The notes beneath the pieces were generated by a model, which searched no databases, was not told the DNA's origin, and saw only the letters and a program-made list of their open reading frames with translations. Below are positions 11,135 through 54,256 of a stretch of 64,000 bases of DNA, in pieces. Location: positions 124,001-188,000 of IMG/VR virus record IMGVR_UViG_3300027816_000051. One strand, given 5' to 3'. The stretch's first letter is position 1. Every line of letters starts with the position of its first letter. The position numbers and the translations under genes were made by a program.

Positions 11135-11135
11135 A

Positions 11136-13277: not shown

Positions 13278-13325
13278 TTTTTTTATTGATTTTTTTTTCA
13301 TATATTTTATAAAATACATTCAAAC

Positions 13326-13670: not shown

Positions 13671-13698
13671 ACCCTGACGGGATGTTCAAAAATTTTAA

Positions 13699-14205
13699 AT
13701 GGGTTACATAAAAAGAAGTTTTGATGACACTGAAGTAAGAAATTTTGCTAAAATTTTCATTAAAGAAGTTTTTAACATTTTGTTCGAGTCACATCCTAAT
13801 TCAAAAGCAATTGATTTAATTTGTGTTGACGATAATTCATTTGGTGTGGAGTTGGAAAGAGGGGGTTGGATTGGTGATTTTTGGGAGAATGAATATTCCT
13901 TGATTAGTGGTTATGATTTTAGGACTGTTAATATTCCAATACGGAAGGTAAAGTATTGGTACGATAAAGTAGGTGATACTATAACCCCAAACAAAAATAA
14001 GCATTGGTTTATTAGAACAAACAGAGATTTTACTCAAGTTATATTAATAAAACCAACCACAATTAAGAATAAAGACAAAATACTTTTCACAGAATTCAAA
14101 CCAAACAATAGTGAAGAGATAGAAAAATGGATGTCATTTAAAAAAGAACACGTTCAAACCTATAACTTAAAGAAGAACAAATGGACACTACAAAGAAAGA
14201 AGTAA
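13699..14205 (+). CDS. Hypothetical protein, possible PD-(D/E)XK-fold nuclease
   Basis: AIDL...GVELE pattern; weak. Confidence 0.4.
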   Translation: MGYIKRSFDDTEVRNFAKIFIKEVFNILFESHPNSKAIDLICVDDNSFGVELERGGWIGDFWENEYSLISGYDFRTVNIPIRKVKYWYDKVGDTITPNKNKHWFIRTNRDFTQVILIKPTTIKNKDKILFTEFKPNNSEEIEKWMSFKKEHVQTYNLKKNKWTLQRKK

Positions 14206-16547
14206 CCAATCTTAAAAATCCCTACATTAAAGTTACATGGCAGGATACACATGAGAACTTCACCTCTGAAAAACTCAATAGAGTTAAATCATATTTTCAA
14301 AAGAAATACAACACAAAGTACGTTCAAATTATAACTAAAGTTATATCCAATGATGACCAAACAAAATTAGCGTCATTAGACATAACAGAAAATATTTCTG
14401 ATTTTCAGTACCAAAAAACTTTGATGAAAGATTTCGTTGAGGAGAATGAAATCAATATATCATTAGAAAGACTTAATAATCTTGACAATAAAGTAAATGA
14501 AGAATTCATCCGTAAAAACGGTGATAGAATCAAATACACTAAATGGTATATCAAAAAGGTTGAATTTTCAAATTTCCTGTCCTATGGGGGAAACAATGAG
14601 ATTGATTTTACCATATTACCCGGCATCACAGTTGTAGAATCTACACCCAAAAATTTTGGTGGTAAGTCAACTGCAACAGTTGATTTAATGATGTTTTTAT
14701 TTTTTAATAAAACCACAAAAACTAAAACCAATTCAGAAATTTTCAATAGGTTCAGTAACAATGACGAAGTAAAAGTTAAGGGATACATAACCATAGACAA
14801 TGAGGACTACATTATTGAGAGAATAAGCTCACGTAAGAAAACAAAAAGTGGTGATTATACCGTCACAAATAAATTGGATTTTTATAAAAAAAATCAAGAT
14901 GGTACGATTGAAAATTTAACAGGTGAACAACGTAGAGAAACTGAAGATTTTATAACAAAGGCAATCGGCACAGAGGAAGATTTTCTATCAACAATATTAA
15001 CAACTGGAAATAATTTAGAAGAACTCATTGAATCAAAACCTACTGCAAGAGGTTTAATACTTACAAAGTTTTTAGGTTTAGAAATTCTTAAAGAAAAAGA
15101 AGAAATCTGTAAAACAATTCAAAGTGAATGGAGTAAAAAATTGATTTCCAATAATCATAATATGAATGATTTGGAAACAGAGATTACTTCTTTTCAAGAA
15201 GGTATCGATGAAAACAAATCAGAAATATCTAGATTAGAAATTGAAACAACAAAAACTCAGTCAACCTTAAAAAATGCGGAAAATAAAAGAGATGATTTGT
15301 TGTCAAAAAGAAACACAGATATTGACCAAGATTTAATTCGTACCAATACAAGTCAAATAAAGGTTGATATTAGTAATTTGGAAAAACAAAAACAAGTTTC
15401 AATTACTAACGCCGATTCTGTTAATGTAAAAGAACCTTCACAGTTTTATCTTGAGGAAAATCATTTGTTACTAAAAGATGAAATGAATGGAATAGTTGTG
15501 GAAGGTAGAGTAAATGCTGACTCCATTAAACGAAACGAAGAACTAATAAAACAATTAGAGGAAGGACAAATATGTCCGACCTGTAAAAGAGCATTAGCTG
15601 AGGTTGACCACACTGATGAAATAAATAAATTAAAAGAATTGGTCGAATCAATTAGGAAAATTCAAACAGATAATCGTAAGAAGTATGATGAATTAACTGA
15701 AAAGGAAAAGGTCTTTATTGATTTGAAAAAAGAGTACGATGGGTACGAAAAAAACAAAATTAAAAAGACAAGGTATGAGTTGGAGGTCGAGCAGAAAAAA
15801 ATAGAAATTGAAAAGTTACAAACAAAACTTGATAACTATGACCGCAACAAACAAAAGTTAGAAGAGAATCAAAGAATAGATGCTGAAATTGTGGGTTTAA
15901 AGTCTCAAATTGAAACCCTCAATGCAAATCTAAGAAGTTATGGCACTACTATTGAAAGATTAAAAAATCAGAATCAAACTTTAACTGAAAAAATTGAAAC
16001 TAATAAGGATTTAATTAGAAAGATAAAAGTTGAAAATGAAACTCAATCTATCTTCAAGGTTTACCTAACCGTTTTCGGTAAGAATGGAATCTCAAAGGTT
16101 ATTTTAAAAAATATGGTCCCACTAATTAACCAAGAGTTGTACAGACTTTTAGTTGATAGTTGTCACTTTATTTTAGAATTGAACATCAACGAGAGAAACG
16201 AGGTTGAATTTATAATGATTGATACTGAAACTAGAGTAGTAAAACCACTCGTTAGTGGTTCGGGTTATGAAAGAACTATTTCATCACTTGCCCTTCGAAG
16301 CGTATTAACCAAGATATCGTCATTACCCAAACCAAATATTGTTGTAATGGATGAAGTATTTGGTAAAATTGCGGATGAGAATTTGGAAATGGTGGGAGAG
16401 TTCTTCAAAAAAATTAAAGATTATTTTGAACACATATTTGTTATTTCCCATAACCCATTAATTAGAAACTGGTCGGACAATTTGGTTATGGTCAAAAAAG
16501 ATAACAACATTAGTTCAATTGATTTTATCACACCAAAAATTTCTTAA
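14181..16547 (+). CDS. Rad50/SbcC (T4 gp46-like) ATPase with N-terminal extension
   Basis: FSNFLSYG, Walker A variant NFGGKST, CPTC Zn hook, coiled coils, Walker B VVMDE, ISH H-loop. Confidence 0.9.
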   Translation: MDTTKKEVTNLKNPYIKVTWQDTHENFTSEKLNRVKSYFQKKYNTKYVQIITKVISNDDQTKLASLDITENISDFQYQKTLMKDFVEENEINISLERLNNLDNKVNEEFIRKNGDRIKYTKWYIKKVEFSNFLSYGGNNEIDFTILPGITVVESTPKNFGGKSTATVDLMMFLFFNKTTKTKTNSEIFNRFSNNDEVKVKGYITIDNEDYIIERISSRKKTKSGDYTVTNKLDFYKKNQDGTIENLTGEQRRETEDFITKAIGTEEDFLSTILTTGNNLEELIESKPTARGLILTKFLGLEILKEKEEICKTIQSEWSKKLISNNHNMNDLETEITSFQEGIDENKSEISRLEIETTKTQSTLKNAENKRDDLLSKRNTDIDQDLIRTNTSQIKVDISNLEKQKQVSITNADSVNVKEPSQFYLEENHLLLKDEMNGIVVEGRVNADSIKRNEELIKQLEEGQICPTCKRALAEVDHTDEINKLKELVESIRKIQTDNRKKYDELTEKEKVFIDLKKEYDGYEKNKIKKTRYELEVEQKKIEIEKLQTKLDNYDRNKQKLEENQRIDAEIVGLKSQIETLNANLRSYGTTIERLKNQNQTLTEKIETNKDLIRKIKVENETQSIFKVYLTVFGKNGISKVILKNMVPLINQELYRLLVDSCHFILELNINERNEVEFIMIDTETRVVKPLVSGSGYERTISSLALRSVLTKISSLPKPNIVVMDEVFGKIADENLEMVGEFFKKIKDYFEHIFVISHNPLIRNWSDNLVMVKKDNNISSIDFITPKIS

Positions 16548-16586
16548 TATCACTTTTTTTTCTTAGATTTAAAAAAAATAATTCAC

Positions 16587-17261
16587 ATGAACAGTAAACT
16601 ATATAAAGACTTCGGACTATTCGCTAAGGACAAAGGGATTAGCGGTTTAAATTTACATCACTACAACAAACAAGTTGAAGACAGTTTAACTCCATACATA
16701 TTGGAAGAGAGACAAATGAACGTAACCGTGATGGATGTATTCTCACGATTGATGATGGAAAGAATCATATGGGTTGCGGGTGTTGTAAACGATAACATGT
16801 CGACAGTGGTTCAAGCTCAACTTATGTTTTTAGACAGTATCGATAATACTGATATCACAATGCACATTGATAGTCCTGGTGGTTCTGTAAAAAGTGGATT
16901 ATCAATGGTGGATGTAATGGATTATATCAACTCGGATATTCGTACAATCAACACTGGAATGGCAGCATCTATGGGTTCGGTTTTACTTGGTGCGGGTACA
17001 AAAGGTAAGAGATGTTCACTAAGATTCAGTAGAACAATGTTACATCAGTCTTCAGGAGGTTTTGAAGGTAATATTCAGGATGCTAAGATTAATATGAAAG
17101 AATGGGAAAAATTAAATAAAATTCTATTTGACCTATTGGGTGAATATTGTAACAAACCATCCGAAGTTGTCATGGAGGATGCGTCGAGAGATTTGTGGTT
17201 ATCATCAGAAGATGCGTTGAGTTATGGCATTATCGATGAGATAATTAGAAAGAAAAAATAA
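16587..17261 (+). CDS. clpP: ATP-dependent Clp protease proteolytic subunit
   Basis: FSRLMMERII, IDSPGG, AASMG (Ser), MLHQ (His), RDLW (Asp). Confidence 0.92.
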   Translation: MNSKLYKDFGLFAKDKGISGLNLHHYNKQVEDSLTPYILEERQMNVTVMDVFSRLMMERIIWVAGVVNDNMSTVVQAQLMFLDSIDNTDITMHIDSPGGSVKSGLSMVDVMDYINSDIRTINTGMAASMGSVLLGAGTKGKRCSLRFSRTMLHQSSGGFEGNIQDAKINMKEWEKLNKILFDLLGEYCNKPSEVVMEDASRDLWLSSEDALSYGIIDEIIRKKK

Positions 17262-17283
17262 TTATTATTAATATTTATATCAT

Positions 17284-17676
17284 ATGGACGAAAGACTTTT
17301 AAACGCAAAAGAAAATACAAATAAAATTGCAGGTTTTCTTGCAAAGAACTATAAAACCGTTTTAATGGTTGTGTTCGGGTTGTTCGTTCTGTATTGGATG
17401 ATTTTCATTTTAACACCTCGAGTGGGTATGTCACCTGAAGATAAGGCGAAGATTGATTCTTTGAATGTTGTAATTAATAACATGTATAAAGAACAAGAAA
17501 TGTTAGACGATAAAATCGACAACATCAATAAAGAAATTGGAGAAGTTGATAATAGTATCGATAAAATTAAAAATCAAAAAACAATAGTAAAGGAAGTATA
17601 TCATGAAAAAATTAATCGTGTTTCTAATTTTACTGAGCCAGAGCTTGATAGCTTTTTCTCAGACAGATACAAATAA
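17284..17676 (+). CDS. Membrane-anchored coiled-coil protein (i-spanin-like topology)
   Basis: One N-terminal TM helix then heptad repeats; TATTTAT at 17272-17278. Confidence 0.5.
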   Translation: MDERLLNAKENTNKIAGFLAKNYKTVLMVVFGLFVLYWMIFILTPRVGMSPEDKAKIDSLNVVINNMYKEQEMLDDKIDNINKEIGEVDNSIDKIKNQKTIVKEVYHEKINRVSNFTEPELDSFFSDRYK

Positions 17677-18031
17677 TAAAAATCGAACCCCCGAACCAGT
17701 AAAATGTTTACCGGTTTCTACATTTAAGTCAATTGCTAAAGACTTATTAAGAGGTGATTCTGCGATTGCTGAATTGAAATTATCAAATGAACAAATCACA
17801 AAATTAGAGGAAAAGGTTTCACTGAAAGATAGTGTAATTGTTACCATGCAGAAGAAAGAGGAAAATTATTTAACAATAATTAAATCTCAAGACGAAAAAT
17901 ATCAAATTTTAGAAAATCACACAAAAAATTTAGAATTACAGTTGAAGAAAGAAAAGGTGAAAAATAAGTTCAAAACCATCGTTGGGGGTGGACTTATTGC
18001 AATTTTATCCGTATTTTTAATCGTACAGTAA
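17603..18031 (+). CDS. Secreted coiled-coil protein with C-terminal TM anchor
   Basis: Signal peptide MKKLIVFLILLSQSLIAFS/Q; overlaps the previous gene by 74 nt. Confidence 0.55.
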   Translation: MKKLIVFLILLSQSLIAFSQTDTNNKNRTPEPVKCLPVSTFKSIAKDLLRGDSAIAELKLSNEQITKLEEKVSLKDSVIVTMQKKEENYLTIIKSQDEKYQILENHTKNLELQLKKEKVKNKFKTIVGGGLIAILSVFLIVQ

Positions 18032-44059: not shown

Positions 44060-44258
44060 AGAAAAGAAATACATCACGGATTTTTTTGTAATAAGAAAGA
44101 AATACCATTGGTTTCTTTTACCAACTCCCATATTTTACTACCGTAAAGACACGTTTTTTGAAACCGGTGCAACCTCACCAAGCTGGGGTTTGGCTTTGAG
44201 ATTCTTAATTTTTATGGTCGGTATTCAGATACAGAAAAACATATATTATAAAAAATGA
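44049..44258 (+). CDS. Hypothetical protein
   Basis: ORF track; ATGA junction to GS. Confidence 0.55.
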   Translation: MSNKEKKYITDFFVIRKKYHWFLLPTPIFYYRKDTFFETGATSPSWGLALRFLIFMVGIQIQKNIYYKK

Positions 44259-45379
44259 AAACAAAAGTAGAATACGTATGGCTTGATGGGTATTCCCCTG
44301 AGCCAAATCTCAGAAGTAAAATAAAAATTGTGGACCTACCGGCACCATTTGAATTGAAACACATCCCCAATTGGGGGTTTGACGGAAGCTCAACTAAACA
44401 AGCGGAAGGTAACTTTTCAGATTGTTATCTTAAGCCAGTAAAATTATATCATACAAATAGTTCACTTGATACAGTATATGTATTATGTGAGGTTTTAGAT
44501 GGTAATAATGAAATTCATCCATCAAATCATAGAGCAAAAGTAGGTGAGGAAGATGTAAATTTTTGGGTTGGATTTGAACAGGAATATTTTATTCGTTCTT
44601 CACATAATAATCCAATTCTTGGATTTGAAAGAAATGGTATCATTGACGGTCAAGGAATTTATTATTGTGGTGTAGGTGGACATATTGTTGGTCGAAATAT
44701 TTCTGATGAACATTTGAACATGTGTTTAAAATATGACATCAATGTGGAGGGAACCAATTCAGAGGTTGCATTAGGTCAATGGGAATACCAAATTTTTGCA
44801 ACAGGTAAAATTGCCGCTTCTGATGATTTATGGATGAGTAGATATTTTTTACATAAAATTGCTGAGAAATATGGTCGTTCTATTGAGTTACATCCCAAAC
44901 CGATGACCCACGGAGAATGGAACGGTTCAGGTTTACATACAAATTTCTCAAATCAAAAAATGAGAGAAGAGGGTGGTGAACAATACTTCAATGCAATTTT
45001 TAGGTCTTTTGAATCAAGAACACAAGAACATATTGACTCTTATGGTTCTGATAACCATTTGAGATTAACAGGTCATTTTGAGACACAATCTATTGATAAA
45101 TTTAGTTGGGGTGTCTCAGACAGAGGTGCATCTATCCGTGTACCAAAATCCGTTGGTGAGACATGGAAGGGTTATCTTGAAGACAGGAGACCAGCATCAC
45201 ACGCGGACCCATATAAAATCGTTAAAGTGATTAGTGATAGTTTATCATTAGCCGAAGAATTAAATAATGTTCATCACATGATGAATGTTGAAATAGACAC
45301 CGAAAAAATTGTAAATAAATACGGTACACTTTCAGGGGAGGAACTCTTGGAAAGTTATCGAAAAGATGAAGAAGAATAA
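44255..45379 (+). CDS. glnII: Glutamine synthetase type II
   Basis: EYVWLDG, WGFDGSST, GFEQEY, EVALGQWEYQ, WNGSGLHTNFS, RLTG, RGASIRVP, YLEDRRP. Confidence 0.92.
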   Translation: MKTKVEYVWLDGYSPEPNLRSKIKIVDLPAPFELKHIPNWGFDGSSTKQAEGNFSDCYLKPVKLYHTNSSLDTVYVLCEVLDGNNEIHPSNHRAKVGEEDVNFWVGFEQEYFIRSSHNNPILGFERNGIIDGQGIYYCGVGGHIVGRNISDEHLNMCLKYDINVEGTNSEVALGQWEYQIFATGKIAASDDLWMSRYFLHKIAEKYGRSIELHPKPMTHGEWNGSGLHTNFSNQKMREEGGEQYFNAIFRSFESRTQEHIDSYGSDNHLRLTGHFETQSIDKFSWGVSDRGASIRVPKSVGETWKGYLEDRRPASHADPYKIVKVISDSLSLAEELNNVHHMMNVEIDTEKIVNKYGTLSGEELLESYRKDEEE

Positions 45380-45557: not shown

Positions 45558-45728
45558 ATGGTAAGTCAACAAATTTTAGATACGTTCATTTATGAAACAT
45601 TAAACGGACAATTTGGTGTGTCCGACCCAACAGAATTTGACCAAACTATTGGGGTTTTTGCAACTAAAATAGAAGCGGAAAACGCATTAAAAGAATACAT
45701 TATTAGAGAACAAATAACTTTTGAGTAA
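45558..45728 (+). CDS. Small protein, not in the ORF track
   Basis: 56-aa MVSQQILDTF...; TAATG coupling to the next gene. Confidence 0.55.
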   Translation: MVSQQILDTFIYETLNGQFGVSDPTEFDQTIGVFATKIEAENALKEYIIREQITFE

Positions 45729-46156
45729 TGGAATTTTTGAATTCACACCCCATAAAAAAGTCGGATTTAGGATTCCACGGAAATTTATTCGGTGGAAAAC
45801 TTTTAGCGTGGATTGACGCGGCGGCTGCGGGATACTCCATGCAATTGTGTGATTCACCAAGATTAGTTACCGTATCAATTGATAAATGTTTTTTTGAAAA
45901 ACCAGCCAAAGAGGGTCAGTTGATTAAAATTTACGGGTCACCAAGTAAATTAGGGAATACTTCAGTTACCTTGTATATGGAAGCAAGAGCACATAATGTT
46001 TACACAGGTAACCAAATTGTCATCTTGAAAACAAACATAAGGTTTGTTAGGATTGATGAAGAAGGTAATCCGGTACCAATTGGTGAAAAAGGTAGGAGTA
46101 GAATTCAAAAATTAATTGACATAAGAGATTCTGAACAAAACGATGTCAACCCTTAA
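45728..46156 (+). CDS. Acyl-CoA thioesterase (hotdog fold, YciA-like)
   Basis: HGNLFGGKLLAWID, VTVS, GNTS, FVRIDEEG. Confidence 0.85.
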   Translation: MEFLNSHPIKKSDLGFHGNLFGGKLLAWIDAAAAGYSMQLCDSPRLVTVSIDKCFFEKPAKEGQLIKIYGSPSKLGNTSVTLYMEARAHNVYTGNQIVILKTNIRFVRIDEEGNPVPIGEKGRSRIQKLIDIRDSEQNDVNP

Positions 46157-46316
46157 AAGACAATATAAAATTTACATTAAACAAAATCCCAACTCAAATC
46201 TTTCTTATGAGGAATGGGAAAAAAATTTTTTGGAAAATTTGAAATTGGGTATGGAATTAGGTGACGATTTTTCAGATTGGGACGTAACTTTAATGGACGG
46301 TTTGGAGGATGAATAA
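46143..46316 (+). CDS. Small acidic protein, not in the ORF track
   Basis: 57-aa ...DDFSDWDVTLMDGLEDE. Confidence 0.55.
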   Translation: MSTLKRQYKIYIKQNPNSNLSYEEWEKNFLENLKLGMELGDDFSDWDVTLMDGLEDE

Positions 46317-46713
46317 AAAGAAACCTGATATTGTTGTTTGGGATGAAACAAATGGGTACGACGCTAATAGAAAGCATTATCCTACCAGTATCGGTTCGCC
46401 AAAATTTGAATTACCTAATGTGGGTCTCGTAAAAAAAGAGTCCTCAAAAAAAATGATTGATGTCTTTAATCGTCAAAGAGAAGAAATCATTCAATCAATA
46501 GAAAAACTTCAAAGAGAGTATGTGGATTCAATAATGGTTTGGGAATCAAAAATTTCTTTTGACCCAATTGTTGGTGAAACATATTACTTATATAATTTTA
46601 ATGGTGTAAATACATTATCATTATTATCACCAAAAGATTGGAATCGGGGTGACGATTTTATTGGTGCTTTTACATTAAATTCAGATAGAAAATGGGTTAG
46701 AAATGAAAGGTAA
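46309..46713 (+). CDS. DUF2452 family protein
   Basis: YPTSIGSPKF, SFDPIVGETYYLY, LSLLSPKDW. Confidence 0.7.
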   Translation: MNKKKPDIVVWDETNGYDANRKHYPTSIGSPKFELPNVGLVKKESSKKMIDVFNRQREEIIQSIEKLQREYVDSIMVWESKISFDPIVGETYYLYNFNGVNTLSLLSPKDWNRGDDFIGAFTLNSDRKWVRNER

Positions 46714-47317
46714 ATTAATATATCAAAAAAAATCTGACGAACTTATTAACAGTGTCGAAGGATGGTTTATTGTTTCTGAAGATTCATCAAAGAATTTTGA
46801 AGCATCAAAAGAAACTTTAGAAAAAATAAAAAGCGGAAAATATGATGTAAAAGACGGTGATGAAGTCGAGTATGTTTTAAAAACAAATTGTCAAGTAATG
46901 TACGATGATATTTTTCATAGTACAATTGCTGACATCATAATAACGCAAAAAATGGTTAGTCGGGTTTTTCTGATTGATATTGATGGGACAATTTGTGACG
47001 ACATTAAAAATGAAGATTCACATCTTTATCCGACAGCTAACCATTACCCAAACGCGTTGGGTATCATCAACAAATGGTACGATGAGGGAAATGTAATTAC
47101 ATTTTTTACCGCTCGTGAAAGTAAAGACCGTGAAGTAACCGAAACATGGTTAAAAGAAAAAGGTTTTAAATATCACGGATTGGTTATGGACAAACCAAGA
47201 ATCAAAGATGACCAAGAATATGTGTGGATTGATAATAGAAAAGTCAGAGCGATTACGTATCTTGGAACGTGGTCTGAATTAAAAGAAGTAGACGCAAAAA
47301 TTCAAACATTTGAGTAA
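46703..47317 (+). CDS. Unknown N-domain fused to a HAD-superfamily phosphatase
   Basis: LIDIDGT, FTAR, MDKP, WIDN. Confidence 0.7.
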   Translation: MKGKLIYQKKSDELINSVEGWFIVSEDSSKNFEASKETLEKIKSGKYDVKDGDEVEYVLKTNCQVMYDDIFHSTIADIIITQKMVSRVFLIDIDGTICDDIKNEDSHLYPTANHYPNALGIINKWYDEGNVITFFTARESKDREVTETWLKEKGFKYHGLVMDKPRIKDDQEYVWIDNRKVRAITYLGTWSELKEVDAKIQTFE

Positions 47318-48642
47318 TGAACAAATTAGATAAACAATACACAGACTTACTCCAAACTATTATAGATTATGGGGTAGAAAAGAAAGACCGTACAGGTACA
47401 GGAACCAAATCTATTTTTGGTTATACAATCCGTCATAAAATGTCCGATGGGTTTCCATTACTTACAACCAAGAAAATGGCGTGGAAGACGATGGTAACCG
47501 AATTGTTATGGTTCCTTCGTGGTGATACAAACATCAAGTTCCTTGTTGATAACAATTGTCATATTTGGGATGGTGATGCGTATAAGAACTATCTAATTGA
47601 AGATGCCAAAATCTTACCTAATATGTCAAAAGAAAAAATGTTAGAGTTAGGATTTCGATTAACAAAAGAAGAATTCATCAACAAAATAAAAACCGATGAT
47701 GAGTTTGCTAAGAAGTGGGGTGACCTCGGACCTGTGTATGGTAAGCAATGGAGAAGATGGGGTAGAAAGAATGTGACTAATTACGACTTAAAGGATGTAA
47801 AAGGTTCTGACCAACACAGAGTACTAAAAGCAATTGAAATCGGTGAAGATGTTACCAAGTATGGTGTCAAAATAGAATACCAAAACAATTCAATAGACCA
47901 AATCACAAACCTAATCAACGACCTTAAAACAAATCCAGACTCAAGACGATTAATGGTCAATGCTTGGAATGTTGGAGAGCTGGACCAAATGGTTCTTCCA
48001 CCTTGTCATTATGGATTTCAAGTTTATACGAGAGAGTTGAGTTTAGATGAAAGGATTAATTATTATAACTCAACAAAAGACCCTTTAAATCAAAGTAGTG
48101 ATTATCACGATGTTCACATGGATAGTTTAAGAGTTCCTAAACGAGCAATCTCTTTAATGTGGAATCAACGCTCAGTAGACACATTCTTAGGTCTACCATT
48201 CAATATTGCTTCTTACGGTTTGTTACTTGAGATTATTGCTAAAGAAGTAAATATGGTACCTGATGAGTTGATTGGTAATTTAGGTGATACTCATTTGTAT
48301 AGTAACCATGTTGAACAAGCAAGAGAACAAATCGGTAGAAAGTATACACATGAAGAGAGAGAAGGTATGTTAAAAGAGGCGATGGGTCCTAATGGTTATA
48401 AAAGTGCGTTGAAAGACTTAGCACCATTTGGTGGAGGTATGTCTGAATATTATGAGATATATAAAATACCACGATACACAAGAGAACCTTATAAATTACC
48501 CAAACTAAAACATATGAAGACCGATGAATTTTATAAATCATTATCTGAAGACTCATCTTTAATAACTCATTTGGAAAATAAGGATTTTCAAATCGAAAAT
48601 TATCAATCACACCCATCGATTAAAGCACCCTTAAGTAATTAA
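47317..48642 (+). CDS. thyA: Thymidylate synthase with insertions
   Basis: DRTGTGT, ELLWFLRG, LGPVYG, DSRR, LPPCH, QRSVD, GLPFN, HLY. Confidence 0.93.
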   Translation: MNKLDKQYTDLLQTIIDYGVEKKDRTGTGTKSIFGYTIRHKMSDGFPLLTTKKMAWKTMVTELLWFLRGDTNIKFLVDNNCHIWDGDAYKNYLIEDAKILPNMSKEKMLELGFRLTKEEFINKIKTDDEFAKKWGDLGPVYGKQWRRWGRKNVTNYDLKDVKGSDQHRVLKAIEIGEDVTKYGVKIEYQNNSIDQITNLINDLKTNPDSRRLMVNAWNVGELDQMVLPPCHYGFQVYTRELSLDERINYYNSTKDPLNQSSDYHDVHMDSLRVPKRAISLMWNQRSVDTFLGLPFNIASYGLLLEIIAKEVNMVPDELIGNLGDTHLYSNHVEQAREQIGRKYTHEEREGMLKEAMGPNGYKSALKDLAPFGGGMSEYYEIYKIPRYTREPYKLPKLKHMKTDEFYKSLSEDSSLITHLENKDFQIENYQSHPSIKAPLSN

Positions 48643-48645
48643 ACT

Positions 48646-48801
48646 ATGAAAATAAGTATTGACAAAGTTGTATATCAATCTTATATTTTACCATATGTTA
48701 AAATAACATATAACAGTTGGTTAAATGGTGATTATGAATTAATAATTGGTTGGTTTAGTTATCAATTGGTTATTGGTTATACACCAAAACATAACAGATA
48801 A
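48646..48801 (+). CDS. Small protein, not in the ORF track
   Basis: 51-aa MKISIDKVVYQSYILPY... Confidence 0.5.
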   Translation: MKISIDKVVYQSYILPYVKITYNSWLNGDYELIIGWFSYQLVIGYTPKHNR

Positions 48802-48814: not shown

Positions 48815-49063
48815 ATGATTAAATTTTTAAAACTGCTATTGATGAAACTTAGGCGTTTAAATTCCCCAACAATAGTTGAACCAGTAAAATGGTCAGTAGA
48901 GGATTTTAATAAAGCCAAAAAATGGGCCCAATCAAGATTACACCCTTCTTATAATGATAGAACAATATGGGACGTGGTTTATAGTGTAAGATATGATACT
49001 GCCGAAGTTCTTCACGAAATAAATAAGTTCATAGTTATAGAAAATAAAAATAAAAACAAATAA
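48815..49063 (+). CDS. Hypothetical protein
   Basis: ORF track. Confidence 0.55.
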   Translation: MIKFLKLLLMKLRRLNSPTIVEPVKWSVEDFNKAKKWAQSRLHPSYNDRTIWDVVYSVRYDTAEVLHEINKFIVIENKNKNK

Positions 49064-49067: not shown

Positions 49068-50444
49068 ATGAAAATTACAAAAACACTATTATTAATTTTA
49101 GGATTGTTTACAATCGTATACTCATGTTCTGACACGAGTAAAACAATTAAACCACAAGAGTTCCCAACGGACTTAGGTATTTCGGGATTCAATTTTCCTG
49201 AAGACTCTACGAAAATTTACGGATGGTTAGAGAATCAAGATACAACCAGTATTGTAAATCACGCGTGGGGTATTTGGGCTGGACTTACTCAACCAACAAA
49301 ACAAAAATACAATGGTCAAACATTGTTGGTTTTTGAAACTTGGATGGGTGTTCAAGAACTATCTGCAATGTCTGCACAGGGTCAAGTTTCAAGTTCAATG
49401 GAAAAATCAAACAGAACTGAACTTAACATCCCGAAACAATTTGTACATGGTAAACTTTTCGCGGGACAAAAGATTGACACAAACTTCACTGTGTTGGAAA
49501 CAGTTTCTTATGACCCATCTGCGGCACATTTTGCAACATCAAACAAATTATTTAATCAATCGTCATTGAACAAATATTTGGTAAAAGATGGAATTGGTGC
49601 GGTACCTGAATTTCCTAATACTTCAATCACCACCAAACCAACATATTATGCTGGTGTACCAAGTAAAAACGGTTTGATTAGAGTACCTGTTTGGGTATCA
49701 CCAAATCCGGCCAAAGCGTATAGATATAATGAATGGCAACAATGGGTTTACGCCGATGTTAATAATAAACAGGAACCGAATAAAAAGTTAGTACCTGTAA
49801 CAACATCAAATCCCACAGAGGAACAAATTAAAGATGCGACCTGTAACGTAAATGATTTTATTAATTATAAAATTGATAGAGTAGGTGCGGACTATCTCAA
49901 TAGTCACCAAGACGTTGGAACTACACCAAGTAGACAATTTATCGAAGGTGACTATGTGTTGTTGGTAGCCATGCACGTAACAACAAAAGAATTTAAAAAT
50001 TGGACATGGCAAACTTATTTTTGGTGCCCTGACCCGTCTAACCCTCCTTCACCAAGTTCTAAATTTGAAGCAGGTCTTAGACCTAAAGAACTTAAAGGCG
50101 CCGCTTCACACTACGCAGTTAGTACAGCATACGCAATGGTTTGGCCGAATCAACCTGTGAGTGGCGGTTCTGACAACAACGCTAGACCGATACTTGCTTT
50201 CAATCCTTATTTAGAGGGTGGATTTGGTCCAAAAGTTTTCAGTTTACAAAACAAATTCAGACCTGATTTTGTGTATGGAATGCAAACAAACTGTATGTCA
50301 TGTCACGCATTGTCGACTATGACGGGTAAGAATGGATACACCACAAATCAATACATTGATATGATGGACACATCGTTATTTAAGAATGATGTTAAATTAG
50401 ATTTCACATGGTCAATTCAAGGTAACTTGAATTCTGATAAGTAA
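49068..50444 (+). CDS. Lipoprotein with a C-terminal CxxCH haem-c motif
   Basis: Signal peptide ending VYS/C; QTNCMSCHA. Confidence 0.7.
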   Translation: MKITKTLLLILGLFTIVYSCSDTSKTIKPQEFPTDLGISGFNFPEDSTKIYGWLENQDTTSIVNHAWGIWAGLTQPTKQKYNGQTLLVFETWMGVQELSAMSAQGQVSSSMEKSNRTELNIPKQFVHGKLFAGQKIDTNFTVLETVSYDPSAAHFATSNKLFNQSSLNKYLVKDGIGAVPEFPNTSITTKPTYYAGVPSKNGLIRVPVWVSPNPAKAYRYNEWQQWVYADVNNKQEPNKKLVPVTTSNPTEEQIKDATCNVNDFINYKIDRVGADYLNSHQDVGTTPSRQFIEGDYVLLVAMHVTTKEFKNWTWQTYFWCPDPSNPPSPSSKFEAGLRPKELKGAASHYAVSTAYAMVWPNQPVSGGSDNNARPILAFNPYLEGGFGPKVFSLQNKFRPDFVYGMQTNCMSCHALSTMTGKNGYTTNQYIDMMDTSLFKNDVKLDFTWSIQGNLNSDK

Positions 50445-50463: not shown

Positions 50464-50775
50464 GTGAAGCTCCGTAAAATCGTAAAAGAATATAAAAATG
50501 CTACAACTTATGAGATATGGGAAGGAATTAGAGACAATTTTACTTTCGGTTTCATCGGAGCGACACTTGTTGTTTTTATTGCAACAAGAACCGACTTTGC
50601 TGTTCTTATCGGTTATATTGTCTACTATTATTACATGGGTCGGATAGTTAATCGACCAAAGTACGTTACAGATTTAGGTAAGTTGATAGTTTTCCCAATC
50701 CCTTCGGCATTGGGTGCGTTCACAGGGTATAAGTTATCTTATACTTTAATTGGGTTATTGGGGAGTATTTTTTAA
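50464..50775 (+). CDS. Small membrane protein
   Basis: GTG start; three hydrophobic segments. Confidence 0.55.
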   Translation: MKLRKIVKEYKNATTYEIWEGIRDNFTFGFIGATLVVFIATRTDFAVLIGYIVYYYYMGRIVNRPKYVTDLGKLIVFPIPSALGAFTGYKLSYTLIGLLGSIF

Positions 50776-50924
50776 TTAGTTCTCCTACCCTGTCCACGGT
50801 AGTTTTTCTCACTTTTATCGTGTTTATTAAAAGATTTTTTAGCTTTACCTAATCTTCTTTTACCAAAATTCACCTTTATAGATGCGTTTGATGATTTACC
50901 TTTTGAACTTTTTCCTGCTGCCAT
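50772..50924 (-). CDS. Small very basic protein (ends YRGQGRRTN), not in the ORF track
   Basis: 50-aa ORF; reverse TATTTAT at 50943-50949; YRGQG tail as in small basic phage proteins I recall. Confidence 0.65.
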   Translation of the reverse strand: MAAGKSSKGKSSNASIKVNFGKRRLGKAKKSFNKHDKSEKNYRGQGRRTN

Positions 50925-50993: not shown

Positions 50994-52829
50994 ATGCAAC
51001 TCATCAAACAAAGATTTTCTTATTTCAGAATAGATTTAGTTAGGGATAATTGTATGTTGTCTGAAGATAGACCAATACCAATTGTTGTATCTGATGGTAA
51101 AGAACTGGATGATGATTTTTTATTTACTGAACAGGTTAAGACACTTGAGCCCGTTGTAAATAGGGATACCAAATTTGAAACCATAAAATTGGAACCAAGA
51201 CCATCAAAGGGTGCGAGGACAAAATATTTTTATGGTGAAAAAGAAAAAGAATACGTTTCTTTCATAAAATTGACAAAAGAACCTTGTTACACAACAAGTG
51301 AAAAACATTTAAAAAGACATTATGGGAATCCTTTCTCATCAATACAAATTGTAACATTTGAAAGAACAATAGAACTTAGAGAAGGTAAACTTTACATAAG
51401 GTGTTACAAGAATACCAGATATCGTGATTTTAATTGGAAATATTTCCGTAAATCTTCCAAGGTAATGACGTTAACAATTGATTTACAGAAGGGAGATTTT
51501 ACGATTGGGGATATGAATTTTGGAAAGATAAAATCCAAAAGATTTAGAAAAAATTCATTTACTACGTTAGAAATCTTGTTGGGTTCAAACAGTCTTTTCA
51601 ATTTAAAAAAAGAGTTTAGTAACAATCTTAAAATCGCTAAGGAATTTGATGACACATTTAATGAACACGAATTTGTAAATGTTATTAAAAATCACATTCC
51701 AAACTTACCTACTAACGTTGGAAACTTATTTGATAAACATTTTTTTATAACTAGTTTTATTGAATTCTTTGCGGAAAAGAAAAAAATAAAAACACCAAAC
51801 GACTTTGTACCACTTATTAAAATACATTACCCAACTGAAAAATACCTTAAAAAGAATCAGAGAAAATTAATGCAATCTATTTTGGATAGTTACGGAATAA
51901 ATTCAAAATTTACCTTGAAACTTTTCCATGAAAATCCAAAATTAAATTTACAAGAGTTTTCATGTATGTGTGATTTACTTGGAAAGGATTATCCAAAATA
52001 CCTCGGTTCTTTGAAAAGTGAATGTTTTAATCTTTTTATGGTAGATAATGGTAATGCACATTCTATGGTACCGCTTGAATTGAGAGGTGCTAAAAATCAC
52101 CACCGACACCTGTTTATTGATAATGTTGATAGGGAAAATATCATTAAAATTTTAAATTCCCTGATTCCCAAACCGGCAGGAGACCATTCAGTATCGTCGG
52201 TTACTCGAGGTATATACACTTTGATAAAAGACCACTTCGATATGATTGAAAAGATTCGTGAATTTGACCCTAACATAAAAATGAGGGCAACAAATTACAC
52301 GGACTTTCATACAGAGCACATTGAACTATCCAAGACATGTTCATTAATCAAAAAGGGTTGGTCAATCGAATATCAATATGACAACAGAATGGTGAGATTA
52401 GTGGAGGAACAAATAAAGACTCGATTTGAGAACGACAATCATATTTTTTCTCCTGTGATATTAAAGAGAGAAGAAGAATATTCGGAAGAGGGTACATTTA
52501 TGCACCACTGTGTTGCCAGTTACGCAAACAAAGAATCATCAATGATAATTTCATTGAGGACCAACGGTGGTTCAGATAGAGTAACATGTGAGTTTAACAA
52601 AAAAACAGGTGACTGTATTCAGGAGAGACATTTTTGTAATAAGTTACCACCTGAGTATTTTGGTGAATCATTAGAAATATTAAAACAAAGAGTTAGAAAA
52701 TTTGCGTCACAAAGATTATTGAACCACATTGATATTAAAAAGGTGAAAGTTAAAATAAATGGGAAGGAAGTCAACCAAAGAGAACCTGATTTATTTGAAC
52801 AACTGATGAATGGTGACATAGAGTTTTAA
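50994..52829 (+). CDS. PcfJ-like domain protein
   Basis: ILKREEEYSEEGTFMHHCVASY, RVTCEF; TATATTTG at 50971-50978. Confidence 0.7.
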   Translation: MQLIKQRFSYFRIDLVRDNCMLSEDRPIPIVVSDGKELDDDFLFTEQVKTLEPVVNRDTKFETIKLEPRPSKGARTKYFYGEKEKEYVSFIKLTKEPCYTTSEKHLKRHYGNPFSSIQIVTFERTIELREGKLYIRCYKNTRYRDFNWKYFRKSSKVMTLTIDLQKGDFTIGDMNFGKIKSKRFRKNSFTTLEILLGSNSLFNLKKEFSNNLKIAKEFDDTFNEHEFVNVIKNHIPNLPTNVGNLFDKHFFITSFIEFFAEKKKIKTPNDFVPLIKIHYPTEKYLKKNQRKLMQSILDSYGINSKFTLKLFHENPKLNLQEFSCMCDLLGKDYPKYLGSLKSECFNLFMVDNGNAHSMVPLELRGAKNHHRHLFIDNVDRENIIKILNSLIPKPAGDHSVSSVTRGIYTLIKDHFDMIEKIREFDPNIKMRATNYTDFHTEHIELSKTCSLIKKGWSIEYQYDNRMVRLVEEQIKTRFENDNHIFSPVILKREEEYSEEGTFMHHCVASYANKESSMIISLRTNGGSDRVTCEFNKKTGDCIQERHFCNKLPPEYFGESLEILKQRVRKFASQRLLNHIDIKKVKVKINGKEVNQREPDLFEQLMNGDIEF

Positions 52830-52867
52830 TACTACATAATTAAATTTAGTCCATGTATATTTTATAC

Positions 52868-54256
52868 ATGGATTTGTTACTTAGACATTATCAAAACAAA
52901 AAATCCAAAACGAACAATTCGGTTTCGATTTGTGAATTACAGTTGTATCAATATGATAGTTTGATACACTATATCGCGGATTTTTCTTTCGATTATTTAC
53001 GATACGGAATAAAAAACATCCTTACCATCCATCACGGGTTCACGGTTAATTTAAAAAACGGGGACATAAATACTTACTACCAATTATCAAACTATTCAGT
53101 GAGTGAAGGTGATAAAGGTAGAAGTAAAAATAATAGAAAGAAGAATAATTTTGATTCAATACTTGCACTAATAGAAAACGGCATGTACAAGGGTGAAAAG
53201 AGAAAAGATTATTGGGGTAAAAGGTATAATAAATCAATTCAGGACATTATTAATATTTTAATATCCAAAATACAATCTGAGTCAAATTTTAATATTGAAA
53301 AGAATTATCAAGAGAAATGCTATATTAATCCACTATATGATTTGTTAGTTGATTTTCATTTATCAAAGAAAAATATAAAATACCATGATACTGTTTACAC
53401 CACAATTCAACAAGAGTATCCACAGAAAAAATGGTTAAAATTAAATGATAATAAATTTTTACCTTCTATTTTAGATTCGTATGGAATTAAATCAAAGTAC
53501 TTGATTGCTGAATTAAATAAACCACAAAACTTTGATGTGAATATTAAAAGTCTAAGCTTTCTATGTAAACTTTTTGGTGATGGTTACGTTGATTATTTAA
53601 GACAAACTAAGTGGCACGACATTGTAAAACGTAATTCTAATTTCAGAAAATTCCACACTTTGAAAAATGATAAAGAAAAATCCATGATGGTCAAGGTTAT
53701 TAATGATTGGGAAACCACAAACCTATATAAAGATAATTTTGTTGAGTTGGTGAACAAATTAATGAATCTTCGAGAATTCATAGAATCCAAAAATATCCCC
53801 TGTAAATTTAATGCGAGCGATTCCGACTCTGTAGAATTACTTTTAAATAAATTTGAAAACATAAAAAATCATTTTAAAAGGGGTTACAAAACAAGATATT
53901 CATTTAATGAGGAGTTCATAAATGAAATAGAATCTGACATTATAATTGACAATAAAGTTTTTCAAACCAAAATACTCAAAACCGAAGAGGATTTTTTCAC
54001 TGAAGGATTTATGATGAAAAATTGTATGTCTAAACAATTCAGCAAAGGTGTGGTCTATATCTATCTTTCCATGAAATGTAATCGAACAAAGATTAATTTA
54101 GAATATAAAAAAGGTAGTTTGATAATGTCTTTTGGTAAGGCCAATAGTCCTGTTGAGTCTTATTTCAATCCCGCAATAAATGAAATATCAAAAAAAATGA
54201 TGAAATATTCCAATATGACATGGACTAAAGAAAAATATGAATATATTTCAAAATAA
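52868..54256 (+). CDS. PcfJ-like domain protein, paralog of the preceding gene
   Basis: ILKTEEDFFTEGFMMKNCM; shares YPxxKxLK...SILDSYGIxSK. Confidence 0.65.
   Translation: MDLLLRHYQNKKSKTNNSVSICELQLYQYDSLIHYIADFSFDYLRYGIKNILTIHHGFTVNLKNGDINTYYQLSNYSVSEGDKGRSKNNRKKNNFDSILALIENGMYKGEKRKDYWGKRYNKSIQDIINILISKIQSESNFNIEKNYQEKCYINPLYDLLVDFHLSKKNIKYHDTVYTTIQQEYPQKKWLKLNDNKFLPSILDSYGIKSKYLIAELNKPQNFDVNIKSLSFLCKLFGDGYVDYLRQTKWHDIVKRNSNFRKFHTLKNDKEKSMMVKVINDWETTNLYKDNFVELVNKLMNLREFIESKNIPCKFNASDSDSVELLLNKFENIKNHFKRGYKTRYSFNEEFINEIESDIIIDNKVFQTKILKTEEDFFTEGFMMKNCMSKQFSKGVVYIYLSMKCNRTKINLEYKKGSLIMSFGKANSPVESYFNPAINEISKKMMKYSNMTWTKEKYEYISK

What the first reader, a model, noticed from the sequence alone, without database searches (positions are those of the whole stretch)
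49068..50444. Phage-encoded c-type cytochrome-like lipoprotein
It has a lipoprotein signal (VYS/C) and a single C-terminal NCMSCH haem-attachment motif in a 458-aa protein. A periplasmic or outer-membrane haem protein is very unusual cargo for a phage and would need host cytochrome c maturation. It could rewire respiration or redox, detoxify peroxide or NO, or act as an envelope enzyme.
Basis: partly seen in the sequence, partly recalled or inferred. Interest (0 to 1): 0.65.

Follow-up and report, generated by a model that had tools for sequence, protein, structure and literature searches.

The report
Phage-borne giant P460-type haem lipoprotein
A large freshwater Flavobacterium phage carries a host-derived gene for an exported, lipid-anchored protein that looks like a much-enlarged cytochrome P460, so the phage probably brings its host a periplasmic haem enzyme for small nitrogen-oxide or peroxide chemistry.

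Summary
Window 49068-50444 (+) is an intact 458-aa ORF with a signal peptide, a lipobox (IVYS|C20) and one CxxCH (NCMSCH, residues 408-413).

The motif is not chance. It is present in 134 of 147 representatives of a family of about 936 clusters, and the 13 without it are fragments or lack the C-terminal match.

The family has no Pfam model. Two AlphaFold models (the better one pLDDT 93) both put the five cytochrome P460 / c'-beta structures at the top of a whole-PDB search (Z 5.8-7.1, next hit 3.8). With the insertions cut out, the family profile aligns to PF16694 at 96% probability. That alignment places the invariant K190 on the P460 haem cross-link lysine and CxxCH on CxxCH.

The contig is a real myovirus (tail sheath, baseplate). 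Nine distinct phage copies form one group inside Flavobacteriaceae sequences, with dN/dS 0.04-0.11.

Only 6 of 201 sampled Flavobacterium genomes have the gene. In some bacteria it is fused to an L-amino-acid-oxidase-like flavoenzyme.

Verdict: a host-derived auxiliary gene for an expanded P460-superfamily haem lipoprotein. Haem binding, the lysine cross-link and the substrate are untested.

The parts
48659..48687 (+). Sigma-70-like promoter match (TTGACA-17-TATATT, 11/12), just after the thyA stop. A possible start of the transcription unit.
   Evidence: This is a consensus match only, and fewer sites were found in the region than in shuffles. Bacteroidota promoters use another consensus that the scan does not cover, so this is weak.
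48815..49063 (+). 82-aa ORF of unknown function. It ends 4 nt before the gene's ATG and is probably co-transcribed.
   Evidence: The same small ORF sits at position -1 in 13 loci, 12 of them phage loci from IMG/VR and the other the window's own genome. No PADLOC match.
49068..50444 (+). Gene for the 458-aa P460-like haem lipoprotein (P0001), stop codon included.
49068..49127 (+). Signal peptide (residues 1-19) and lipobox Cys20, the predicted acylation site and mature N-terminus.
   Evidence: Sequence. C20 is invariant in A1 and kept in 8 of 9 distinct phage copies.
49635..49637 (+). Codon of Lys190 in the strand ITTK190PTYY. Family-wide invariant that aligns with the haem cross-link lysine of cytochromes P460.
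   Evidence: Invariant in 81 sequences. hhalign places FPxxAIxxK on the P460 motif fP(D/E)GsiivK. The McP460 motif PDGAILVK is seen. The cross-link residues Lys70/Lys78/Lys106 are listed in review PMC11928373, table 2.
49971..49976 (+). Codons of Met302-His303 in the strand LLVAMHVTTKE. His303 is invariant. Met302 aligns with the conserved Met of the P460 'fMvKD' strand.
50292..50306 (+). CMSCH (C409-x-x-C412-H413), the c-haem attachment motif with the proximal His ligand.
   Evidence: Invariant. Aligned to the CxxCH of PF16694 proteins.
50464..50775 (+). 103-aa hydrophobic ORF (GTG start) directly downstream. Probably a small membrane protein in the same unit.
   Evidence: No Pfam family. Hydrophobic window. 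Found directly downstream (+1, once +2) in 15 loci, 14 of them IMG/VR phage loci and the other the window's own genome.
50785..50802 (+). Terminator-like hairpin followed by a T run, closing the putative unit.
   Evidence: One site was found against 1.2 expected in shuffles, so it is only suggestive.

Best explanation
The gene encodes a host-derived auxiliary protein of a large freshwater Flavobacteriaceae myovirus. It is a Sec-exported, lipid-anchored protein with one c-type haem, and its core is the beta-sheet fold of the cytochrome P460 / cytochrome c'-beta superfamily. About 280 residues of insertions, found throughout this family, enlarge that core. After export, the host's CcsBA-type synthase would attach haem to C409/C412, with H413 as proximal ligand. 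The invariant K190 lies where P460 enzymes cross-link a lysine to the porphyrin. The protein is therefore most likely a P460-type active-site haem, not an electron-shuttling cytochrome. It would bind or oxidise a small diffusible molecule at the outer face of the cytoplasmic membrane or further out. Hydroxylamine or NO is the first candidate and peroxide the second. The phage would thereby give infected cells a reaction that most Flavobacterium strains lack. Shown here: the ORF, the export signal and motif, conservation, the phage setting, the fold match, the profile alignment, host origin, and purifying selection. Inferred: haem attachment, the lysine cross-link, location, substrate, and the benefit to the phage.
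For: Motif and signal. Conservation: K190, W209, H303, E308, W312, W319, P380, E383, C409, C412 and H413 are invariant in 81 sequences down to 25% identity, and CxxCH is in 134 of 147 representatives. Fold: two independent AF2 models (pLDDT 80 then 93, pTM 0.85 then 0.92). In a search of 48,161 PDB chains the top five are exactly the five P460/c'-beta representatives: 8brk, 6hiu, 7s5o, 2je3, 6amg. Z is 5.2-6.7 and 5.8-7.1, with 127-141 aligned residues, which is most of each target. The next hit is Z 3.8-4.0. A language-model search independently found a cluster carrying PF16694. Sequence: the core-only profile against 25 Bacteroidota PF16694 proteins gives hhalign probability 96%, E 4e-9, 103 columns. 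The native segment order ranks first of 120 permutations. The alignment puts K190 on the cross-link Lys column, which is K in 17 and F in 6 of 25 classical members. It also puts M302 on the fMvKD Met, NWTW on GGWGY, and CxxCH on CxxCH. P460 features are taken from PMC11928373. Phage: tail sheath, baseplate, DnaB and RNR are on the same record, and there are 22 IMG/VR loci. Origin and selection: the phage copies form one group (SH-aLRT 91) nested in a Flavobacteriaceae clade with SH-aLRT 97. dN/dS is 0.04-0.11 and the family-wide invariant residues are kept in 9 of 9 phage copies. Rarity in hosts: 6 of 201 sampled Flavobacterium genomes. Maturation is possible: CcsBA-type genes are in 5 of 5 carrier genomes. 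Possible transcription: 99-100% identical contigs from four metatranscriptome runs (three studies) lie inside the gene.
Against: No Pfam, NCBIfam or PDB sequence hit to P460 at any threshold, and Foldseek finds nothing significant. Z of 6-7 is in the range the tool itself calls 'middling'. The 96% profile match was obtained after I chose which segments to keep, guided by a weaker first alignment (28% probability), so it is partly circular. The position aligned to the P460 distal carboxylate (Glu96/Asp102), which is needed for NH2OH oxidation, is Val300 here. By the known rule this would be a P460 with a non-polar pocket and unresolved function. I could not obtain residue-level superposition or model coordinates, so the K190-haem distance is unchecked. 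The bacterial fusions to a flavoenzyme and the conserved neighbourhood (two-component system, tail-collar proteins) point to a physiological role that is not obviously nitrogen-oxide detoxification. The RNA evidence consists of contigs in RNA libraries, and DNA carry-over is not excluded.
Confidence: 0.55

Rival explanations
1. It is the haem partner of an amino-acid-oxidising flavoenzyme pathway. It would consume or use the H2O2, imine or N-containing product made by an L-amino-acid oxidase / tryptophan-2-monooxygenase-like enzyme. The phage copy would act as a stand-alone peroxidase or peroxide-activated enzyme in the envelope.
For: In seven Flavobacteriaceae genomes (L032, L036, L038, L039, L040, L042, L060) and in P0122, one ORF of about 1260 aa joins a PF01593 flavoenzyme to this domain through a hydrophobic segment with a lipobox. 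In L067 the two are adjacent separate genes. The flavoenzyme's closest solved relative is tryptophan 2-monooxygenase 4iv9 (E 4e-70), followed by an L-amino-acid oxidase/monooxygenase. According to the review read, P460 cross-link formation depends on peroxide and a c'-beta-Met variant behaves as a peroxidase mimic.
Against: Most family members, including all phage copies, are not fused. No such flavoenzyme was found in the 155 kb of phage genome held. In the fusions the flavoenzyme part has no signal peptide, so it would be cytoplasmic while the haem domain is exported. That rules out direct electron transfer between the two.
Confidence: 0.2
2. It is an ordinary electron-transfer cytochrome c that plugs into the host respiratory chain and boosts or redirects energy supply during infection.
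For: It has one CxxCH, is exported and membrane-tethered, and has an invariant His303 and near-invariant Met302 and His65 that could supply a sixth ligand. A few homologues give weak hits to class I cytochrome c models.
Against: The fold matches only the P460/c'-beta family. As-isolated P460s and c'-betas are described in the review as high-spin, ligand-binding haems with a distal cap, not bis-ligated electron carriers. The protein is about four times larger than a shuttle needs to be. No respiratory genes lie beside it, either in phages or in bacteria.
Confidence: 0.1
3. Its value to the phage is structural. It would be an envelope lipoprotein that masks or alters a receptor (superinfection exclusion), as some phage lipoproteins do, with the haem irrelevant or secondary.
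For: It is a lipoprotein, expressed from a non-structural region. In one bacterial lineage the homologue lies directly after a TonB-dependent receptor gene (L003-L005). One homologue has a T9SS sorting domain, so some members reach the cell surface.
Against: All haem-site and other family-invariant residues are kept in nine phage copies that have diverged to about 50% identity, with dN/dS 0.04-0.11. The receptor adjacency is seen in only one lineage of about 80 loci. No exclusion-type family matched.
Confidence: 0.1
4. The CxxCH does not carry haem. It would be a metal site or redox disulfide in a protein of unrelated function, and the P460 resemblance would be a common beta-sheet arrangement.
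For: There is no sequence-level hit to any haem family. The Z scores are below 8. The fused bacterial forms start without a signal peptide.
Against: The five top structural hits are all from one small family in which CxxCH sits at the same C-terminal place. Four separate motifs are collinear with that family. The fused forms keep an internal hydrophobic segment and lipobox just before the domain, which is compatible with export of the domain. Carrier genomes have CcsBA-type genes.
Confidence: 0.05

Closest known systems
Cytochrome P460 (Nitrosomonas europaea 2JE3, Methylococcus capsulatus 6HIU, Nitrosomonas sp. AL212 6AMG; Pfam PF16694)
   Same: It shares the beta-sheet fold (Z 5.8-6.5, 132-141 aligned residues). 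It has a single C-terminal CxxCH with a proximal His, and a Lys at the aligned cross-link position inside a similar FP..(I/V)..K motif. The Met strand and the (G/N)W.W strand are collinear. Both are exported.
   Different: It is 458 aa against about 150-190. Roughly 280 residues of insertions lie before and between the core strands. It is lipid-anchored rather than soluble. It gets no score against PF16694. The aligned distal-carboxylate position is Val (compared with table 2 of PMC11928373). Additional invariant residues (H303, E308, E383, W209) have no P460 counterpart. Dimerisation was not tested. It occurs in heterotrophic Bacteroidota and their phages, not in nitrifiers or methanotrophs.
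Cytochrome c'-beta (Thermus thermophilus 7EAD/8BRK, M. capsulatus 6HIH, N. europaea 7S5O)
   Same: It gives the best structural match (8brk Z 7.1, 127 of 135 residues). Same fold and haem motif. Like c'-beta, the aligned distal pocket looks non-polar.
   Different: c'-beta proteins have Phe or Met where P460s have the cross-link Lys (and seen). This family has an invariant Lys there. The differences in size, insertions and lipid anchor are as above.
PHROG 19967 (phage protein family, unknown function)
   Same: Full-length match, E 6e-27, covering residues 25-451. The protein type has therefore been seen in phage or prophage data before.
   Different: The PHROG has no annotation. Nothing links the PHROG to haem or P460.
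Tryptophan 2-monooxygenase / L-amino-acid oxidase flavoenzymes (4IV9, 3WE0) as fusion partners
   Same: In seven Flavobacteriaceae genomes the domain is translationally fused to such an enzyme, which suggests a shared pathway.
   Different: The phage protein is not fused, and the phage fragment has no such enzyme.
Redox auxiliary genes of phages (for example cyanophage plastocyanin and ferredoxin; from general knowledge, not tested here)
   Same: A host-derived metalloprotein gene kept by a lytic phage lineage, presumably to modify host physiology during infection.
   Different: Those are small electron carriers of photosynthesis. I found no report of a phage P460-type or covalent-haem lipoprotein in the paper library. 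Searches gave nothing relevant, and the 2025 review of the superfamily does not mention phages, Bacteroidota or lipoproteins.

Membership tests
Cytochrome P460 / c'-beta superfamily | Characteristic beta-sheet fold | tested here: met
   In two models the five PDB representatives of the superfamily are ranks 1-5 of 48,161 chains: Z 5.2-6.7 and 5.8-7.1. They cover 85-94% of each target, and the next hit is Z 3.8-4.0. Foldseek is not significant.
Cytochrome P460 / c'-beta superfamily | Single CxxCH near the C-terminus, with His as proximal ligand | tested here: met
   C409-M-S-C412-H413 of 458 residues. Invariant and aligned to the CxxCH of PF16694 proteins. Ligation itself is not testable here.
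Cytochrome P460 / c'-beta superfamily | Scores above the Pfam PF16694 gathering threshold | tested here: not met
   No hit even at E 10 for the protein or at E 1 for 81 family members. Only a core-only profile-profile comparison links them (96%, E 4e-9).
Cytochrome P460 proper (as opposed to c'-beta) | Lysine at the haem cross-link position | tested here: met
   K190 is invariant in 81 sequences and aligns to the K/F column of classical members. The position is identified from PMC11928373 table 2 and the McP460 alignment. The alignment has low confidence over the full length.
Cytochrome P460 proper | Covalent Lys-porphyrin cross-link and P460 chromophore | not testable with these tools
   This needs spectroscopy and mass spectrometry of the protein.
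Catalytically active P460 (NH2OH oxidase) | Distal carboxylate (Glu96 in NeP460, Asp102 in McP460) | tested here: not met
   By the hhalign register the equivalent residue is Val300 (with for the McP460 register). The invariant E308 and E383 lie elsewhere and might substitute, which is unknown.
Cytochrome P460 / c'-beta superfamily | Small (about 150-190 aa) soluble periplasmic homodimer | tested here: not met
   458 aa with a lipobox. Classical Bacteroidota members are 162-254 aa. The oligomeric state was not tested.
Bacterial lipoprotein | N-terminal signal peptide followed by a lipobox with an invariant Cys | tested here: met
   MKITKTLLLILGLFTIVYS|C. The Cys is invariant in A1 and present in 8 of 9 phage copies. 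Position -2 is Tyr, which is atypical. Acylation and final location (inner membrane, outer membrane or surface) are not testable here.
c-type cytochrome | Export plus a maturation system in the host | tested here: met
   Signal peptide. CcsBA-type ORFs of about 1050 aa are in 5 of 5 Flavobacterium genomes carrying the family. None was found in the phage fragment. Covalent haem was not tested.
Phage auxiliary (host-derived) gene | Lies inside a bona fide phage genome, has cellular homologues, and is kept under selection | tested here: met
   Tail sheath and baseplate on the same record. 22 viral loci. Nested in a Flavobacteriaceae clade. dN/dS 0.04-0.11.

The most novel reading that the evidence does not exclude
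A previously unrecognised, widespread branch of the P460 superfamily (about 900 clusters at 50% identity, mostly Bacteroidota) consists of enlarged lipoproteins that really carry the lysine-cross-linked P460 haem. A lineage of large, probably jumbo, freshwater Flavobacterium phages has long carried one. Infected heterotrophs would then gain periplasmic hydroxylamine/NO oxidation, and so possibly N2O or NO release. This would be a virus-encoded step of the nitrogen cycle outside nitrifiers.
Probability: 0.2. Interest if true: 0.8.

Novelty: new variant of a known kind. Interest (0 to 1): 0.6.

Why it matters
Cytochromes P460 are studied because they turn hydroxylamine into N2O or NO, and they have been characterised almost only in nitrifiers and methanotrophs. 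This finding points to a large, unannotated, much-enlarged branch of that superfamily in common heterotrophic Bacteroidota. It shows that abundant lake phages have kept a copy for a long evolutionary time.

If the haem and the lysine cross-link are real, three things follow. It would be the first covalent-haem, P460-type enzyme known to be carried by a virus. It would give a tractable single-gene protein for defining what the enlarged family does. It would raise the question of whether phage infection changes nitrogen-oxide or peroxide chemistry in freshwater blooms.

The fusions to an amino-acid-oxidase-like enzyme give an independent handle on the natural substrate.

Tried and rejected
- **Family libraries.** Pfam and NCBIfam scans of the protein gave nothing useful. 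The only NCBIfam row, RmlC at E 0.007 and far under its cut-off, I treat as noise. A Pfam scan of 81 homologues gave only weak class I cytochrome c hits around the motif.
- **PDB by sequence.** One spurious hit, 4gxz at E 0.05.
- **Foldseek.** Nothing significant against PDB (two models) or against viral BFVD.
- **Whole-length hhalign against PF16694 proteins.** It aligned the signal peptides first, which is an artefact. After trimming it gave only 28% probability.
- **Weak PF16694 hit in an Ignavibacteria genome (L108).** It is unrelated to this family.
- **tblastn against 50,697 deposited phage genomes.** No match. Nucleotide search found only a 150-nt thyA stretch shared with Flavobacterium phage vB_FspM_immuto.
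- **Terminase_6N and Gp23 Pfam models.** They found nothing in the 155-kb fragment. The phage nature was established with PHROGs instead.
- **TonB-receptor adjacency.** It turned out to be lineage-specific.
- **PADLOC.** No defence family for the protein, its phage neighbours or the bacterial module.
- **Literature.** Searches for phage P460, phage haem cytochromes and tail-collar modules gave nothing relevant.
Full report
**1. The observation**

Window 49068-50444 (+) is a single open frame of 458 codons. The product starts MKITKTLLLILGLFTIVYS|C: positive residues, a hydrophobic core, then a lipobox-like VYSC with Cys20.

It contains one CxxCH, at residues 409-413 (NCMSCH, nt 50292-50306, checked). 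Only five cysteines are present, so a chance CxxCH is very unlikely.

Conservation settles the matter.
- The word-index search found 482 homologues.
- The exhaustive profile search found 936 clusters at 50% identity with E <= 1e-3.
- C20, C409, C412 and H413 are invariant in 20 sequences down to 48% identity.
- C409, C412 and H413 are invariant in 81 sequences down to 25% identity.
- 134 of 147 listed representatives have the motif. The other 13 are fragments or do not match the C-terminal part of the profile.

**2. Is it phage DNA?**

The window is bases 59125-123124 of a 155.7-kb IMG/VR record rated about 50% complete. Outside the window the record encodes:
- a tail sheath (phrog_23, E 7e-56);
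- a baseplate wedge subunit;
- a DnaB-like helicase;
- a class I ribonucleotide reductase.

Inside the window there are SbcC-like, methylase, glycosyltransferase, thymidylate synthase and PcfJ-like genes.

Proteins identical to this one lie on IMG/VR contigs of up to 288 kb. The virus is therefore a large myovirus, probably above 200 kb (an inference).

The only nucleotide similarity to a cultured phage is a thyA stretch shared with Flavobacterium phage vB_FspM_immuto.

The DNA occurs almost letter for letter in at least 14 runs, from nine studies, of lake and freshwater metagenomes.

**3. Local anatomy**

- The gene starts 4 nt after an 82-aa ORF.
- A 103-aa hydrophobic ORF follows it, and then a terminator-like hairpin at 50785-50802.
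- A sigma-70-like promoter match lies at 48659-48687, after thyA. Both signals are weak.
- The unit sits in a block of non-structural, metabolism-like genes: glnA-like, 4HBT thioesterase, DUF2452, HAD phosphatase and ThyA.

**4. What the protein is**

No Pfam or NCBIfam family matches. PHROG 19967, of unknown function, matches over the full length.

*Structure.* An AlphaFold model from 20 sequences has pLDDT 80. A second model from 81 sequences has pLDDT 93 and pTM 0.92. Foldseek finds nothing significant in the PDB.

An exhaustive structural alignment against 48,161 PDB representatives puts the same five chains on top for both models:
- cytochrome c'-beta of Thermus (8brk);
- cytochrome P460 of Methylococcus (6hiu);
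- c'-beta of Nitrosomonas (7s5o);
- P460 of N. europaea (2je3);
- P460 of Nitrosomonas AL212 (6amg).

Z is 5.2-6.7 and 5.8-7.1. Each alignment covers 127-141 residues, most of the target, spread over model residues about 30-458. The next hit scores 3.8-4.0.

These Z values are only middling in absolute terms. However, all representatives of one small haem family occupy ranks 1-5 twice. A language-model search also independently returned a cluster carrying PF16694.

*Sequence.* I collected 25 classical PF16694 proteins from Bacteroidota genomes. The full-length family profile aligned to them only weakly (28% probability), but the alignment made biological sense. I then removed the insertions, keeping residues 80-97, 139-163, 176-200, 288-322 and 398-445.
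- hhalign then gave 96% probability, E 4e-9, over 103 columns.
- The native segment order ranked first of 120 permutations.
- This step is partly circular, because the first alignment guided the choice of segments.

Four motifs are collinear with the classical family:

| This family | P460 family |
|---|---|
| V.Y.P.AA | v.y.N..A |
| FP..AI..K190P | fP(D/E)GsiivK |
| GD..LLVAM302H | GD.....fMvK |
| NWTW, then NCMSCH | GGWGY, then .C..CH |

**5. The lysine**

According to the 2025 review of the superfamily (PMC11928373, table 2), P460s are defined by a lysine cross-linked to the porphyrin: Lys70 in N. europaea, Lys78 in M. capsulatus, Lys106 in AL212. In c'-beta proteins that position is Phe or Met.

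The alignment of a Chitinophaga P460 to the PDB chains shows this residue is the K of PDGAILVK in McP460. It is the F of PDGAVLVF and PKGTVIVF in the c'-beta proteins. In the 25 classical Bacteroidota proteins the column is K in 17, F in 6, R in 1 and C in 1.

In the new family the aligned residue, K190, is one of only eleven residues invariant across 81 divergent sequences. That is the strongest hint that these proteins are of the P460 type, not the c'-beta type.

Against a hydroxylamine-oxidase role, the position aligned to the distal carboxylate (Glu96/Asp102) is Val300. The family-specific invariants H303, E308 and E383 cannot be placed without coordinates.

**6. Distribution and origin**

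In species-representative genomes the family is almost confined to Bacteroidota and their relatives: Flavobacterium, Mesonia, Salegentibacter, Reichenbachiella, Chitinophagaceae, Saprospiraceae, Mucilaginibacter, Melioribacter and Ignavibacteria. Distant members (25-29% identity) occur in an Endozoicomonas MAG and a Pyrinomonadaceae MAG.

It is rare within the probable host genus, at 6 of 201 sampled Flavobacterium genomes. All five carriers tested have a CcsBA-type cytochrome c synthase. The phage fragment has none.

In a maximum-likelihood tree of 84 sequences, the nine distinct phage copies form one group (SH-aLRT 91). That group sits inside a well-supported Flavobacteriaceae clade (SH-aLRT 97). 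This fits one old capture from a host followed by descent within a phage lineage.

Among phage copies dN/dS is 0.04-0.11. The family-wide invariant residues are kept in all nine copies, although Tyr429, which is conserved only among the closer homologues, is Asn in L023. One copy (L023) has a plain signal or anchor instead of a lipobox. Gene neighbours differ between phage sub-lineages, so the gene behaves as an independent cargo gene.

**7. Clues from bacteria**

(a) In seven Flavobacteriaceae genomes and one metagenomic protein, the domain is the C-terminal part of an ORF of about 1260 aa.
- The N-terminal 600-800 residues are a PF01593 flavoenzyme.
- Its closest solved relatives are tryptophan 2-monooxygenase (4iv9, E 4e-70) and an L-amino-acid oxidase/monooxygenase.
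- The junction keeps a hydrophobic segment and lipobox, and the N-terminus has no signal peptide. The flavoenzyme would stay in the cytoplasm while the haem domain is exported.
- In L067 the two are adjacent separate genes.

(b) In 19 of 80 bacterial loci the gene is followed by one to three tandem proteins of about 180 aa with the phage-tail-collar domain. It is often preceded by a 7TMR-DISM-like membrane protein, a HisKA_3 kinase, a LuxR-type regulator and a 114-aa ORF. Two phage lineages (L019, L025) also have collar-domain ORFs just downstream.

(c) One homologue carries a T9SS sorting domain.

None of these neighbours belongs to a known defence family. These associations show that the bacterial protein works in a regulated envelope module whose function is unknown. 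They suggest a link to amino-acid-derived nitrogen or peroxide chemistry.

**8. Expression**

Short contigs that are 99-100% identical to the window lie inside the gene (49081-49450, 49688-49882). They come from four metatranscriptome runs in three studies. These are contigs in RNA libraries, without a DNA control, so the evidence for transcription is weak.

**9. Most likely mechanism**

The precursor is exported by Sec and acylated at Cys20. Haem is attached to C409/C412 by the host CcsBA, with H413 binding the iron.

The P460-type pocket, probably with K190 cross-linked to the porphyrin, binds or oxidises a small diffusible molecule. Hydroxylamine or NO are the precedents in this fold. Peroxide is the alternative suggested by the flavoenzyme fusions.

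The phage supplies this activity to hosts that mostly lack it. The identity of the protein (a haem c lipoprotein of the P460 superfamily) I put at about 0.8. The cross-link I put at about 0.5, and nitrogen-oxide chemistry at about 0.3.

Rivals are listed with their tests: peroxide or flavoenzyme partner, plain electron carrier, receptor-masking lipoprotein, and non-haem motif.

**10. Novelty**

The fold family is known. This enlarged, lipid-anchored, Lys-invariant branch has no Pfam model and is not mentioned in the 2025 review. I found no report of a phage-borne member and no viral structure like it in BFVD.

I rate it a new variant of a known kind, of moderate to high interest. It gives a concrete and cheap experiment: a haem stain and a spectrum of one protein.

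**11. Limits**

- I had no residue-level structural superposition and no haem in the model.
- The profile match depends on excising insertions.
- The host is inferred, not shown.
- The phage genome held is incomplete.

Noticed in passing
L032, L036, L038, L039, L040, L042, L060 (ORFs about 3500-7320 in each locus); L067:3627-7371: In Flavobacterium, Mesonia and Salegentibacter the P460-like domain is fused behind a tryptophan-2-monooxygenase / L-amino-acid-oxidase-like flavoenzyme. An internal hydrophobic segment plus lipobox sits at the junction, implying a cytoplasmic flavoenzyme and an exported haem domain made from one ORF. In L067 they are separate adjacent genes.
   Followed up: partly
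L028, L032, L033, L039, L050, L056, L089, L090, L094 and others (genes flanking position 6001-7400): A recurrent bacterial module: a 7TMR-DISM-like membrane protein, a HisKA_3 kinase, a LuxR regulator and a 114-aa ORF lie upstream. One to three tandem proteins of about 180 aa with the phage-tail-collar domain (PF07484) lie downstream. Sometimes there is also a 2OG-Fe(II) oxygenase, an LRR protein or a periplasmic binding protein. No PADLOC defence family matches the collar, 114-aa or 7TMR-DISM-like proteins tested.
   Followed up: partly
L019:7353-8752 and L025:7353-7610: Two related phage lineages carry collar-domain ORFs (85 and 271 aa) immediately after their copy of the gene. This mirrors the bacterial arrangement. 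The window's phage has a 103-aa membrane ORF there instead.
   Followed up: no
window 47317-48642: The thymidylate synthase ORF is 441 aa. The Pfam match spans residues 6-344 but only profile positions 1-227 of 266. The protein therefore has internal insertion(s) and a C-terminal extension of about 100 aa.
   Followed up: no
window 50994-52829 and 52853-54256: Two tandem large ORFs (611 and 467 aa) cluster together as paralogues. The first has a PcfJ-like domain. Both are conserved at the same place in the close phage relatives.
   Followed up: no
window 44255-45379, 45728-46156, 46309-46713, 46703-47317: A run of metabolism-like cargo genes lies upstream: a short (374 aa) glutamine-synthetase-like protein, a 4HBT thioesterase, DUF2452 and a HAD phosphatase. 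A paper read reports that glutamine synthetase is needed for hydroxylamine-forming heterotrophic nitrification in Alcaligenes. Any link to the P460-like gene here is pure speculation.
   Followed up: no
L016:7398-7961 and L017:7371-7928: In two related phages the ORF directly after the gene gives weak hits to anti-CBASS Acb1 and the 2H phosphoesterase family (E about 1e-4, below the Pfam cut-offs).
   Followed up: no
L109:919-2094 and L116:1471-2427: Classical PF16694 P460 domains in Bacteroidota also occur fused behind a second CxxCH region (391 and 318 aa, two CxxCH each). This may be a built-in electron-transfer domain.
   Followed up: no
one member of alignment A2: One distant homologue carries a T9SS C-terminal sorting domain (Por_Secre_tail, E 9e-13). 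At least some family members are therefore sent to the cell surface or outside.
   Followed up: no
L139:6652-11487 and L139:11800-17823 (G000 bases 6652-17823): Two very long ORFs (1611 and 2007 aa) lie near the tail sheath gene in the part of the phage genome outside the window. They were not annotated.
   Followed up: no
runs X6 and X11-X14: Several runs that hold the stretch almost completely are labelled 'fungus metagenome', although all the others are lake or freshwater samples. This may be a labelling oddity of the study.
   Followed up: no
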